Positions 6,518-52,913 of a DNA stretch of 64,000 nt are shown in pieces; position 1 is the stretch's first letter, and every line of letters begins with the position of its first letter. The position numbers were made by a program, and so were the translations under genes. The notes under the pieces were generated by a model. The model did not search any database, was not told the DNA's origin, and saw only the letters and a program-made list of their open reading frames with translations. Origin of the DNA: Podarcis liolepis (taxonomy: Eukaryota); the NCBI GenBank assembly GCA_965112155.1, contig OZ218107.1; one strand, written 5' to 3'.

Positions 6518-6694
6518 NNNNNNNNNNNNNNNNNNNNNNNNNNNNNNNNNNNNNNNNNNNNNNNNNNNNNNNNNNNNNNNNNNNNNNNNNNNNNNNNNNN
6601 NNNNNNNNNNNNNNNNNNNNNNNNNNNNNNNNNNNNNNNNNNNNNNNNNNNNNNNNNNNNNNNNNNNNNNNNNNNNNNNNNNNNNNNNNNNNNN
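6518..6694. other. Assembly gap (177 N)
   Basis: Run of N. Confidence 1.
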
Positions 6695-18434: not shown

Positions 18435-18899
18435 TTAGATGTAAGGGTACTGGTTGACCTTGGTTGGGCTCAAGGGGTATCCAGTGTAGACAGAGGCTGG
18501 AGATGCACTGATATAGGTCTGGTGGGCAAACTGAGCCTGATACTGGCTTGGGTGGATGGTGGGCGACGGAAGGACACGAGGGCCCATGCTGACGGGAACC
18601 TGGTGGACGATGCTGGCTGGGTATGTGGTGTGCTGGACAGCGTGGCGGGCCGACCCCTGGGAAGCCACCAAGTGGGCCACCGTCCCTGTCGAGCCCAGAG
18701 CCGCCGGCGCAGTGTATGTGTAGAGATGAGGCTGCGTGGGGAGGTGAGCAGCTGCAGCCGCGGCCAGGTGGGGGTGGACCGTACCGTGGCTGGGGCTGTT
18801 GTGTGGGAAGGAATAGGGTGCCTGAGCAATTGTCGGAGTGATGTAGGCTTGCTGCCGCCGGTGACTCCCTGTGCGATCCGTCGTGATGTGCTGCTGGGC
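18435..18899 (-). CDS. HIPK2: HIPK2 last coding exon (15), Ala/Gln/Tyr/His-rich tail ending ...[11 protein letters not shown]
   Basis: ORF 18435-18923; acceptor ctctgaacag; TAA at 18435-18437; C-terminus typical of HIPK2. Confidence 0.97.
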
Positions 18900-19913
18900 C
18901 TGTTCAGAGAGGAGCGCCAACAAAACGAGGGTGAAGTTTTAATCGCCACAGTTCTCAAGCACAACAGCATGCTCTCGGGAGGCTTAAATCCCAACCTATT
19001 TTCTATCCCTTTCCATCATGCACAGTTTCTGGATTTCTGGCTTCCCTGGCGGTTGCAATCTCTCTCCTCTGCCTGGCAAACTGCATTTCCTGCAATGCTG
19101 CAACCATCCACTGGTCCCATTCCTGCAAGGAATATCTGAAAGACCTGTATGAGTGCTCAGTTCCTAGCTGGGGTGAACAAGCACCCTGAAATTGTCAAAA
19201 GAGAGGCTCCAGCATTCAAGATGGCAAGATGCTCTTCATGGGAGGTGGACTGGCCACTGTCACTCTTGTCATTCTACCTGTGCCCCATCCCAACCCCCTT
19301 GCCAGCAGCTGGTTAAGATTTCTGGGCCTCACCAATGGTTGCAGGAGCCTGAACTTGGCACTCACTTTCATGAACATCCTTTGAAAAGATATATTAGCTC
19401 TGTTCCCAACCTTACTTCCTAACTCTTGGGTAATCCAAAAAGCAGCAGCTTCAGGCTGAAGAGCAAGAGAGGGGGAGAAGGAACACAAGGATTTCCCACC
19501 TCGTCTGCTGAGAAACTCTCAAGTAGCAGCAGCAATTCTGTCGAGCTACCTGAATTATTTCCCTCCCACCCAGTTGTTGTAATAGTCACTTTAATTACTA
19601 GTGGCTGGTTTCTTTCTTCCTCCACCCTCACCACCCTTTTTTCCCTTGCATGCCATGCCATGCCTTTTCAGAATGTAAGCCTGAGAGCAAGAAATGTCTT
19701 CCTCCTGCTTTGTTGTTGTTTTTTATGCCACTCTAGGAACTCTAGGAACACATTCTTAGCTAAACACTCTAGGAACACAAAGAAATCTGCGAAAGCTGGT
19801 CTGAATGAAAACAGGCAGTCTCCCGTGGGTCGTGCCACTTCTTGGGCAGTCTTGGAAAGATTTTGCAGGAACCTCCTGCCTGCCTGTCCTCTCTCCACTC
19901 TCCCTTTGCTTAC

Positions 19914-21408: not shown

Positions 21409-21656
21409 CTGGTACCAAGTTATCACATTCTACTAACACCTCGCTGGCCTGCGTTTTCAGTGGCGGCACGATGATCGTCCGAGGATTGCCGTTGCAATGC
21501 GTTTCCGGCGCTCCCTTCGTGTCATAGCTGTTTCCGTTGTTGTTCCCTCCTCGATGCTGCACTGCATAGGGGCTGTTGTTGCCGGAGGAATCAGAGTAGG
21601 GGGAGTCATGCACAGTTACACAGCTGATGACATTTTTCCTTTGCTTAGACAGGGGG
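21409..21656 (-). CDS. HIPK2: HIPK2 exon 13, 248 nt: [24 protein letters not shown]...[25 protein letters not shown]
   Basis: ORF 21368-21667; acceptor tcttgcag, donor GTAGGT. Confidence 0.96.
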
Positions 21657-21989
21657 CTGCAAGACAAAACCAGGCCCTTCCCGCGTTAGGCTTCCGCTTG
21701 CGCCAGTGCATAAATGCAAACTCAGTCTGTCCTTTCAATGGCGGCACTTAACATTTATTACATTCTCTTTATTTTGAAGGCTTGTGAGACACACACACAA
21801 CCAGCTTTTAACCTAATGACTCTCAAAATGCGAATACATCTCAGAGCTGAGGTAATCAATGTGGTGCCCTCCAGATGCTGTTGGACTACAGCTCCCATGA
21901 TCCCACGCTGACTGGGGCTGATGGGAGTTGGAGGCCAACATCTGGAGGGCAGGACATTGGCTACCCCGAACTTAGACCAAATGTTGATT

Positions 21990-22184
21990 ACAGGTAGGTA
22001 GCCGTGTTGGTCTGCCGTAGTTGAAACAAAATAAAAAAAATCCTTCCAGTAGCACCTTAGAGACCAACTAAGTTTGTTATTGGTATGAGCTTTCGTGTGC
22101 ATGCACACTTCTTCAGATACACTGAAATGCACACGAAAGCTCATACCAATAACAAACTTGGTTGGTCTCTAAGGTGCTACTGGA
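21990..22184 (-). mobile_element. Penelope-like retroelement (PLE) terminal fragment with inverted partial duplication
   Basis: 12-bp perfect TSD caaatgttgatt (21978-21989 / 22185-22196); 58-bp inverted arms; embedded minimal hammerhead typical of PLE pseudo-LTRs. Confidence 0.85.
22083..22120 (-). ncRNA. Minimal type I hammerhead ribozyme motif
   Basis: GUAU-CUGAAGA-A-GUGUG CAUG CACAC-GAAA-GC-UC|AUAC: stem I GUAU/AUAC, CUGANGA box, stem II, GAAA box, AGCU helix III, UC cleavage site. Confidence 0.8.
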
Positions 22185-23337
22185 CAAATGTTGATTGTTT
22201 AGTTGATTTAAATTCAGTGTGTCTGGATATGATGCATTATCCCTCATTTTCTGCTTCTACATTCACTGTGTTGCCCCTCTCCCTAGGTTAGCGTGAACTC
22301 AGAAAGGCTAAGCAATTTTTCAAGCTAATCTGCCTGCAACAATGTGAAAGAAATTATGAGAAACTAGCATCAGCCTCCCTTGTGTCGTGCTAGAAGTTTG
22401 TGACACAAAATACACCGGCCTTTTTGGATTCACACTACTCTTCGTGCCGAATGACACTGAGAATTTCCCACAGAACACCTTCCACATTTCTACCTACTTT
22501 AGAGAGTAGGTGACTGCAGAAATTTGCTCAAATGGCTCATCTTCTGAAAGACACACACACACACACAAGCCCGACTACGGAAAACAGCAGCGATGTTTTG
22601 CCAATTGCATTACGTTGTTATAGCAACTGCAATTTTTGTAAAATGACGACAAGAAACAGATCGTGTATATAAAGAACTTGGCAATTAGGTATGTTGGCGG
22701 AAGCCATCTCATGGGGAGGCAAACACTGTAAAGAATCCAAATGGGGGTTTCCCAAAGCTTTTCAGTGCTAAATTTTCATATTCCCTCCATGCCTTTTGCT
22801 GCTGCTACTAAAAGGCTTAGTGTGATAAAAAAAAAAGCTACTTCAAGGGAAGCGGCATTTTTTGTTGAACTTTTAGTTAGTTGCTTGTTGCATTTATATT
22901 CTGCCTCTTTTTTTGCCAATTTGCCAATTTGCCAATTAAAAATGTTAATGAGTAGCGCTAAATAACTTCAGGCTGACTTCAGGAGCTGATGGCAGCAATT
23001 CCATAGCCTGGGCTTCCTGGCTTCTGCGTTCCCTCAGGGAACACAGGCCTTAAGTAGCCTCAGGGAAGGAGGGGGAGGTTTCTGCCTTCCCTCACAGCAC
23101 ATAGGGCTTTCTTTATAAGCCCCAGGTAGCCCCAATAATTACCTCAGACCTTTGATGGTCCCTTCATGGGCTCCCCGGCCTAGGTTCCCTGGCATCTGCG
23201 TTTCCTCAGGACGCAGGGCTTGAGGAACCCCAAGGAAGGTGGGGCTCACAGGGCAAACTGTAATTTTAAGTTGTTTAAAACTGTTTTTAACCATTGTGTT
23301 TTTATTCTTGTAACCTTTAGTACTGGGACCTTAGGAT

Positions 23338-52510: not shown

Positions 52511-52913
52511 TCAGTTACCTGCATCTGCTCTGAACTCTATTTAACCTTCATTGCTACTCCAGGTAGGCACCACAAAACCTTCCACCCCTTTCGGCCAAGC
52601 TCCCAAATAGCTTTATTACATATTGTCCACCTCACATGAAATTGCACAGGAATTGAAGTAAATCCATGAGTTTCGAGACCGCTGCTAAATTTTCATCAGA
52701 TGTGAGCTGCAGACTCGGTAACACACAGTTGTAGAGGGAAATGGTGGCATCTTTCCCCTATTCAATGCCTGTGTAAAGCTTTTTTACATTTGTGGGGGGC
52801 AGGGAACAGGGTCATGCTACTAACAGAATGGATGCAAGGAATAGATGTTTGGTCACCCTAGACTTGGAGCCCCACATGGCTTTGGTTTTTTGGGGGGTGC
52901 TACCATACTCAAC

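What the first reader, a model, noticed from the sequence alone, without database searches (positions are those of the whole stretch)
22083..22120. Intact minimal hammerhead ribozyme on the sense strand of HIPK2 intron 12
Seen: the minus (HIPK2 pre-mRNA) strand reads GUAU CUGAAGA A GUGUGCAUGCACAC GAAA GC UC|AUAC. This has both conserved hammerhead boxes, a 4-bp stem I, a palindromic stem II and a tiny palindromic AGCU helix III. Predicted cleavage is between 22087 and 22086, about 430 nt upstream of the exon 13 acceptor. Established: minimal type I hammerheads of this form occur in Penelope-like retroelements and generally need dimerisation to cleave efficiently, so the motif class is not new. 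Inference: a potentially self-cleaving RNA is transcribed with every HIPK2 pre-mRNA, between the SIM/speckle exon and the C-terminal regulatory exons.
Basis: partly seen in the sequence, partly recalled or inferred. Interest (0 to 1): 0.85.

Follow-up and report, generated by a model that had tools for sequence, protein, structure and literature searches.

The report
Retroelement hammerhead relic, locked in hairpin
The 38-base hammerhead-ribozyme motif is real, but it belongs to one copy of an extremely abundant Penelope-like retroelement repeat that landed in a HIPK intron, and at this site it is a lone copy buried in a 58-bp hairpin, so it is an ordinary transposon relic rather than a regulator of the gene.

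Summary
Observation confirmed. The minus strand at 22120-22083 has every feature of the minimal type I hammerhead of Penelope-like elements (PLEs). These are the CUGAAGA and GAAA boxes, an unpaired A after A9, a G10.1-C11.1 pair, a 4-bp helix I, a palindromic AGCU in place of helix III, and C17 at 22087. A structural descriptor finds this one site in the window and none in 300 shuffles.

The motif is not a HIPK2 feature. It lies in a 195-bp insertion (21990-22184) flanked by a 12-bp target-site duplication. The insertion is a 5'-truncated forward copy plus an adjacent inverted partial copy, which is the published PLE insertion signature. Reads from three related species put summed depths of 3-6 million on the element, against about 55 on unique flanks.

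The 3' 20 nt of the motif pair with the inverted arm (57 of 58 bp). The hammerhead-competent fold costs +36 kcal/mol. No partner copy for dimerisation exists in the 64 kb. Rfam hammerhead models do not match. An RNA run shows no pile of ends at 22086/22087 in the repeat family, and it does not cover this intron.

The scan has noted this motif many times elsewhere in this genome: 208 'hammerhead' notes in 682 windows. Verdict: a known kind, very probably inactive here, low interest.

The parts
22083..22120 (-). Minimal type I hammerhead motif. Helix I is GUAU/AUAC. The core is CUGAAGA, with an unpaired A before G10.1. Helix II is GUGUG-CAUG-CACAC. GAAA follows, then AGCU (15.1-15.2 / 16.2-16.1) in place of helix III, then C17.
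   Evidence: Sequence read; exact single match in the window; only descriptor hit, with 0 in 300 shuffles.
22086..22087 (-). Predicted scissile bond, 3' of C17 (22087) and 5' of A1.1 (22086).
   Evidence: Position follows from the hammerhead numbering applied. Aggregated RNA reads show no excess of ends here (table 6).
21990..22126 (-). Forward, 5'-truncated copy of the abundant repeat. It comprises the loop and 5' half of the HHR, the 3' half of the HHR, about 45 nt, a T-rich stretch and a 3' tail.
   Evidence: The pile-up of contigs and reads starts at 21988-21993 and fades by about 22120-22127 (tables 2, 7, 8). Other copies continue past 22127 with different sequence (table 7).
22127..22184 (+). 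Inverted partial copy, the upstream arm in the pre-mRNA. It is the reverse complement of 22045-22102 with one mismatch (22069/22160).
   Evidence: 57/58 complementary, 24-nt loop 22103-22126; hairpin MFE -111.7 kcal/mol, z -14.9.
21978..21989 (.). Target-site duplication, left copy (CAAATGTTGATT).
   Evidence: Exact 12-nt direct repeat abutting both ends of the insertion.
22185..22196 (.). Target-site duplication, right copy (CAAATGTTGATT).
   Evidence: The junction of arm and flank is also present in contigs of organisms A, E and G (table 8, records 8, 16, 24).
21409..21656 (-). Next downstream coding exon of the host HIPK gene. The acceptor AG is at 21658-21657 and the donor GT at 21408-21407.
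   Evidence: Sequence and reading frame.

Best explanation
This is one copy of a very high-copy, Penelope-like-element (PLE)-derived repeat inserted in a HIPK (probably HIPK2) intron. The insertion (21990-22184, 12-bp TSD) is a 5'-truncated 3'-terminal fragment of the element, joined head-to-head to an inverted partial copy of itself. PLE terminal regions carry a minimal type I hammerhead, thought to process tandem PLE transcripts as a dimer, and this fragment retains one complete motif in the sense orientation of the gene. At this locus the motif is very probably silent, for three reasons. It is a monomer whose 'helix III' is only the 4-nt palindrome AGCU. It has no partner copy nearby. And in the pre-mRNA the already transcribed upstream arm pairs with the 3' 20 nt of the motif (half of helix II, GAAA, AGCU, the cleavage site and the helix I 3' strand) in a 58-bp stem. 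Shown here: the motif, the insertion anatomy, the repeat abundance and the energetics. Inferred: PLE parentage (from motif type and insertion architecture) and catalytic silence (from thermodynamics and published assays on other min-HHRs).
For: Motif features match the published PLE min-HHR list: an unpaired nucleotide between 9 and 10.1, G10.1-C11.1, helix I of 4-5 bp, an enlarged helix II, and palindromic 15.2-16.2 (PMC4209133 read; sequence; descriptor). The insertion has a 12-bp TSD and a 57/58 inverted arm. Craig et al. describe PLE insertions as highly 5'-truncated, often with an adjacent inverted 5'-truncated copy and with the HHR near the 3' end (PMC8557442). Abundance: summed depth is 3-6 million on 22010-22133 against about 55, 23 and 15 on unique flanks in three species. 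Energetics: the hairpin is -111.7 kcal/mol and the HHR-competent fold -75.5, giving an equilibrium share of about 1e-25; without the arm the share is still only about 0.6%. AGCU/AGCU contributes only -2.5 kcal/mol. There is no second copy or second descriptor hit in 64 kb. RNA reads on the family show no place where molecules begin or end at a fifth of the depth (table 6). Published assays report no monomer cleavage and low dimer cleavage (PMC4209133; review PMC6765202).
Against: No autonomous PLE (RT plus GIY-YIG ORF) with this 3' end could be examined, so PLE parentage is by resemblance. The inverted arm lacks the element's last ~55 nt. It is therefore not the textbook 'inverted 5'-truncated copy' and may come from fold-back synthesis at the helix II palindrome. 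Thermodynamic equilibrium ignores helicases, co-transcriptional kinetics and possible trans partners from the very many family transcripts. The RNA run did not cover the unique intron flanks at all (depth 0), so nothing was measured on this locus's own RNA. No other copies could be fetched, so no covariation test was possible.
Confidence: 0.85

Rival explanations
1. The motif does cleave some HIPK2 pre-mRNA. This could happen transiently before the hairpin closes, after unwinding, or by pairing in trans through AGCU or helix II with other family transcripts. It would lower the output of the 3' exons.
For: All core positions are intact and the motif is in the sense orientation 430 nt upstream of an exon. 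Family RNA is present in a relative's transcriptome in both orientations. The authors of PMC4209133 propose that in vivo factors raise activity.
Against: The upstream arm is transcribed first and is 57/58 complementary. The active fold costs +36 kcal/mol. Monomers are inactive and dimers weak in vitro. No end pile-up is seen in family RNA. With very many copies scattered in introns, efficient cleavage would be broadly harmful.
Confidence: 0.04
2. The relevant RNA feature at this locus is the 58-bp near-perfect intronic hairpin itself, not the ribozyme. It would act as a double-stranded RNA substrate (A-to-I editing, Dicer or Drosha processing, or local slowing of splicing).
For: The hairpin is exceptionally stable (-111.7 kcal/mol, z -14.9). 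Rfam reports only weak miRNA-precursor-like hits (31-36 bits). The RNA run shows a somewhat larger share of A>G plus T>C places (17 of 59) than DNA of the same species (7 of 40) (table 1).
Against: The Rfam hits lie far below gathering scores (85-90) and match both strands equally, which is generic hairpin behaviour. The editing hint is small and aggregated over all copies. No small-RNA data were examined. There is no conservation argument.
Confidence: 0.08
3. The hammerhead likeness is a chance by-product of a palindrome-rich repeat, with no ribozyme ancestry.
For: Rfam hammerhead models give no hit even at E<=10 on an 81-nt slice. The isolated fold is not unusually stable.
Against: The descriptor gave 0 hits in 300 shuffles of 64 kb, both strands. 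Four features that the core-box pattern does not force are present: the bulged nucleotide after A9, G10.1-C11.1, palindromic 15.2-16.2 and a short helix I. These are the features Cervera and de la Pena used to argue against chance. The carrier has the PLE insertion architecture.
Confidence: 0.03

Closest known systems
Minimal hammerheads (min-HHR) of metazoan Penelope-like elements (Cervera and de la Pena 2014, PMC4209133; Lunse, Weinberg and Breaker 2017, cited in PMC6765202)
   Same: Type I topology and the same core. There is an unpaired nucleotide between A9 and G10.1, a G10.1-C11.1 pair, helix I of 4 bp and an enlarged helix II. There is no real helix III, only a palindromic 15.x/16.x tetranucleotide that could pair with a second copy. 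The motifs are massively dispersed, mostly as single motifs in truncated elements, and were reported in reptiles.
   Different: Nothing qualitative. Helix II here is 5 bp plus a 4-nt loop (a fully palindromic 14-mer) rather than the 7-8 bp of the Schistosoma families. In this copy the fold-back junction lies inside helix II, so only one arm carries a whole motif.
Complex tandem/inverted PLE insertions (Craig et al. 2021, PMC8557442)
   Same: 5' truncation, an inverted copy abutting the 5' end, a target-site duplication, and the HHR about 100 nt from the 3' end.
   Different: The inverted copy here also lacks the 3'-terminal ~55 nt of the element, so it is an internal fold-back duplicate rather than a second 5'-truncated insertion.
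Conserved intronic hammerheads of amniotes (HH9 in RECK, HH10 in CCDC186; Rfam RF02275, RF02277)
   Same: A hammerhead on the sense strand of an intron of a protein-coding gene.
   Different: By established knowledge, those are single-copy, deeply conserved, canonical ribozymes with a stable helix III and loop-loop contacts. This one is a repeat copy without helix III or loops, and it does not match those Rfam models.
Animal non-LTR retrozymes (Cervera and de la Pena 2020, PMC7229834; Li et al. 2026 preprint)
   Same: Type I hammerheads with a weak helix III, related to PLE terminal regions. Monomer derivatives are scattered through genomes, and about 43% of Xenopus copies overlap introns.
   Different: Retrozymes are tandem arrays that yield circular RNAs. 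Here there is a single unit with no tandem partner.

Membership tests
PLE minimal hammerhead (min-HHR) | Core boxes C3-U4-G5-A6-N7-G8-A9, G12-A13-A14, A15.1/U16.1 and H17, in type I order | tested here: met
   CUGAAGA ... GAAA ... U-C at 22116-22087 on the minus strand.
PLE minimal hammerhead (min-HHR) | Unpaired nucleotide between A9 and 10.1, and a G10.1-C11.1 pair | tested here: met
   An extra A at 22109; G 22108 pairs with C 22095 (bulge 1, G10.1-C11.1 True).
PLE minimal hammerhead (min-HHR) | Short helix I (4-5 bp) and enlarged helix II (6-8 bp) | tested here: met
   Helix I is 4 bp, GUAU/AUAC. Helix II is 5 bp plus a CAUG loop within a 14-nt perfect palindrome. This is slightly shorter than the published range.
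PLE minimal hammerhead (min-HHR) | No stable helix III; palindromic 15.2-16.2 allowing a dimeric helix III | tested here: met
   AGCU at 22091-22088. The duplex is worth only -2.5 kcal/mol.
PLE minimal hammerhead (min-HHR) | Located in the terminal repeat (pLTR) of an element encoding RT and GIY-YIG endonuclease | not testable with these tools
   This copy is a 195-bp fragment without an ORF. Only the insertion architecture (TSD, 5' truncation, inverted copy) fits. Other copies could not be fetched.
PLE minimal hammerhead (min-HHR) | Large intragenomic families with covariation in helices I and II | tested here: inconclusive
   Very high abundance is shown in three species. No variant at 10% or more is listed inside 22080-22125, while 22040, 22060, 22075 and 22079 vary at 40-70%. 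However, 47 rows were not shown and no alignment could be built.
PLE minimal hammerhead (min-HHR) | Self-cleavage as a dimer | not testable with these tools
   This needs an in vitro assay. There is no partner copy in the window.
Canonical type I hammerhead (Rfam Hammerhead_1 and clan) | Match to the covariance model (helix III hairpin, loops 1 and 2) | tested here: not met
   No hammerhead family among matches at E<=10, on either 4 kb or 81 nt.
Conserved amniote intronic hammerheads (HH9/HH10) | Single-copy, model match, stable monomeric fold | tested here: not met
   No Rfam match, a multi-copy repeat and an unstable monomer.
Non-LTR retrozyme | Head-to-tail tandem repeats of an HHR-bearing unit | tested here: not met
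   No direct repeat of the unit. The only other match is the element's own inverted arm.

The most novel reading that the evidence does not exclude
Despite the hairpin, the sense-strand motif cleaves a measurable share of HIPK2 pre-mRNA. It might do so in trans-dimers with the abundant family transcripts, or after helicase or ADAR remodelling. A transposon ribozyme would then have been co-opted to tune the output of the C-terminal exons in this lineage.
Probability: 0.02. Interest if true: 0.6.

Novelty: already known. Interest (0 to 1): 0.1.

Why it matters
The finding matters little in itself. It is one more copy of a motif class described in 2014 as massively dispersed in non-mammalian vertebrate genomes, reptiles included. 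Its practical value is for the scan. In this genome a hammerhead core in an intron should first be treated as part of this repeat family. The frequent fold-back architecture of the insertions predicts that many such motifs are structurally locked. If sense-strand intronic copies did cleave, hundreds of host genes would be affected. That would be a genome-wide question, not one about HIPK2.

Tried and rejected
**Rfam.** I ran Rfam at permissive thresholds on 4 kb and on 81 nt. There was no hammerhead hit, only sub-threshold miRNA-like hairpin hits on both strands, so the miRNA-precursor reading is rejected.

**Looking for other copies, to build an alignment and test covariation.**
- Exact-pattern scans of viral, metagenome and prokaryote genome collections with two different 22-23-mers were all blank. 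This is as expected for a vertebrate repeat.
- blastn and nhmmer of the element against the window found only the element and its own arm.

**Other checks that gave nothing.**
- The protein atlas gave no usable name for the last-exon ORF.
- The second core-pattern match, at 52661-52699 on the minus strand, fails the structural descriptor and is taken as chance.
- The Lunse et al. 2017 paper is not held, so its content is cited only through the review PMC6765202.
- The dimeric hammerhead fold could not be scored. The intermolecular helix III crosses helix I, which is a pseudoknot for the nearest-neighbour model. Only its parts were evaluated.

Full report
**What is there.** On the minus strand, 22120-22083 reads GUAU CUGAAGA A GUGUGCAUGCACAC GAAA GC UC AUAC. 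The 34-mer from CUGAAGA onward occurs once in the window, even allowing 3 mismatches. With standard hammerhead numbering:
- C3-A9 is CUGAAGA.
- An extra A follows A9.
- G10.1 (22108) pairs with C11.1 (22095) at the base of a 5-bp helix II with a CAUG loop.
- G12-A14 and A15.1 are GAAA.
- 15.2/16.2 are G and C, so 15.1-16.1 spell the palindrome AGCU.
- C17 is 22087, and the scissile bond lies between 22087 and 22086.
- Helix I is 4 bp (GUAU/AUAC).

I wrote a structural descriptor modelled on the one in Cervera and de la Pena 2014. It requires the core boxes, an optional bulge, helix II of at least 4 bp, 0-8 nt in place of helix III, U-H, and helix I of at least 4 bp. It finds this single site on the two strands of the 64 kb and nothing in 300 dinucleotide-preserving shuffles. 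The isolated 38-mer folds no better than its shuffles (-6.8 kcal/mol, z -0.44).

**Gene context.** The acceptor AG is at 21658-21657. The last-exon ORF (18435-18923, minus) finds many unnamed close relatives. The only named relatives are homeodomain-interacting protein kinases. Paralogue 2 and the intron number rest on my recollection of the HIPK2 C-terminus and were not tested.

**What carries the motif.** The motif sits inside a 195-bp insertion, 21990-22184, bounded by an exact 12-bp direct repeat, CAAATGTTGATT, at 21978-21989 and 22185-22196. Read in the gene's orientation, the insertion has three parts:
- an inverted arm (22184-22127);
- a 24-nt loop (22126-22103);
- the forward copy (22102-21990).

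Arm and forward copy are complementary at 57 of 58 positions (22045-22102 against 22127-22184; the mismatch is 22069/22160). The whole insertion folds into a hairpin of -111.7 kcal/mol, z -14.9.

**Repeat abundance.** I laid Logan contigs of three related species (coded A, E, G) and raw RNA reads of species G on 21700-22600.
- Positions 21988 to about 22120-22127 belong to an extremely abundant repeat. Summed depths are 3-6 million there, against about 55, 23 and 15 on the unique flanks. The tool warns that this is not a copy number, but the contrast is four to five orders of magnitude.
- Other copies run on beyond 22127 with a different, shared sequence (table 7). This copy is therefore 5'-truncated there, and the arm is a local rearrangement.
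- The arm-flank junction (22156-22541) is present in contigs of all three species, with 2 to 10 differences over about 385 nt (table 8). The insertion therefore predates their divergence.

**Match to the literature.** Cervera and de la Pena (PMC4209133) defined the min-HHR of metazoan PLEs. Its features are a short helix I (4-5 bp), a large helix II, a conserved unpaired nucleotide between 9 and 10.1, a conserved G10.1-C11.1 pair, and no helix III but palindromic 15.2-16.2. They found thousands of such motifs per genome, mostly as single motifs in truncated elements, and saw them in reptiles. Every sequence feature on that list is met here. Craig et al. (PMC8557442) describe PLE insertions as strongly 5'-truncated, often with an inverted 5'-truncated copy abutting the 5' end, and place the HHR near the 3' end. 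Here the HHR lies about 97 nt from the 3' end of the insertion. One difference is that the inverted arm also lacks the last ~55 nt of the element. It starts inside the helix II palindrome, which would fit fold-back synthesis at that palindrome; this is inference. Rfam's hammerhead models do not match at E<=10, on either 4 kb or 81 nt. To my knowledge those models describe canonical ribozymes with a helix III hairpin, and the 2014 authors also needed a dedicated descriptor.

**Would it work here?** Four lines of evidence say probably not.
1. **Published assays.** A single min-HHR gave no detectable cleavage. Dimers and trimers cleaved weakly and mostly at non-physiological Mg2+ (review PMC6765202).
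2. **No partner.** The window holds no second copy of the element and no second descriptor hit on either strand. The would-be intermolecular helix III is worth only -2.5 kcal/mol. Two molecules would instead pair through the 14-nt helix II palindrome, at -25.2 kcal/mol.
3. **The hairpin lock.** The 3' 20 nt of the motif are paired with the upstream arm, which is transcribed first. These 20 nt cover half of helix II, GAAA, AGCU, the cleavage site and the helix I 3' strand. Forcing helices I and II with an open core raises the energy from -111.7 to -75.5 kcal/mol, for an ensemble share of about 1e-25. Even without the arm the share is about 0.6%, because a small UUUCAG/CUGAAG hairpin sequesters the first box.
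4. **RNA reads.** In species G's RNA run, 2,340 reads lie on the repeat, equally in both orientations. No position has an excess of read starts or ends at a fifth of the depth (table 6).

There is one limit on the fourth line. The unique intron flanks had zero depth in that run, so the reads come from other copies and nothing was measured on this locus's own RNA.

**Other readings.** The scan's own notes record 208 'hammerhead' notes in 682 windows of this genome. Many describe palindromic, TSD-flanked Penelope-like mini-insertions, and one describes this same hairpin lock (s1-847119). These are unchecked notes and not evidence, but they agree with the abundance measured. The hairpin as a double-stranded RNA substrate remains possible and untested. 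The miRNA-like Rfam hits are far below threshold and symmetric on both strands.

**What could not be done.** No alignment of family copies could be built, so covariation was not tested. The autonomous parent element was not seen.

**Verdict.** The motif is real and correctly read, and the class is already known. This copy is an ordinary, rearranged retroelement fragment whose ribozyme is very probably inert at this site.

Noticed in passing
window 21851-21965: A second, unrelated, abundant repeat sits about 25 bp from the insertion. It is a palindromic MITE-like unit with 30-nt arms at 83% complementarity. Summed depth is about 3-4.5e5 in the same runs, and it gives weak sub-threshold miRNA-like Rfam hits (mir-5408, mir-3036).
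   Followed up: partly
beyond window 22127 in other copies (table 7): In other family copies the sequence upstream of the hammerhead continues with a shared stretch (93% agreement among RNA reads). Read in element orientation, this stretch contains TATATAGAAGG about 30 nt before the motif. It may be the element's internal promoter region, as pLTR promoters are described for PLEs.
   Followed up: no
window 22045-22184, aggregated over family reads: The RNA run X23 shows more A>G plus T>C variant places (17 of 59) than the DNA run of the same species (7 of 40). This is a faint hint of A-to-I editing of fold-back copies, not significant as it stands.
   Followed up: no
window 22018-22022: About a quarter of the RNA reads (129 of 557) lack 5 nt at 22022 in the T-rich tail. 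This variant is nearly absent from the DNA contigs, which suggests that a particular subfamily is the expressed one.
   Followed up: no
table 5c (joints from 22120 back to 22086-22091 or 22051): A few low-depth contigs join a copy that ends shortly after the cleavage site to a new unit starting exactly at 22120, the first base of helix I. These are rare tandem or rearranged copies with a recurrent 5' boundary at the hammerhead's edge.
   Followed up: no
window 52661-52699 (-): CTGATGA...CGAAA...TC matches the bare core pattern but has no helix I or helix II. It is taken as chance.
   Followed up: yes
window 6518-6694: A run of 177 N (assembly gap or masked). It was left untouched.
   Followed up: no
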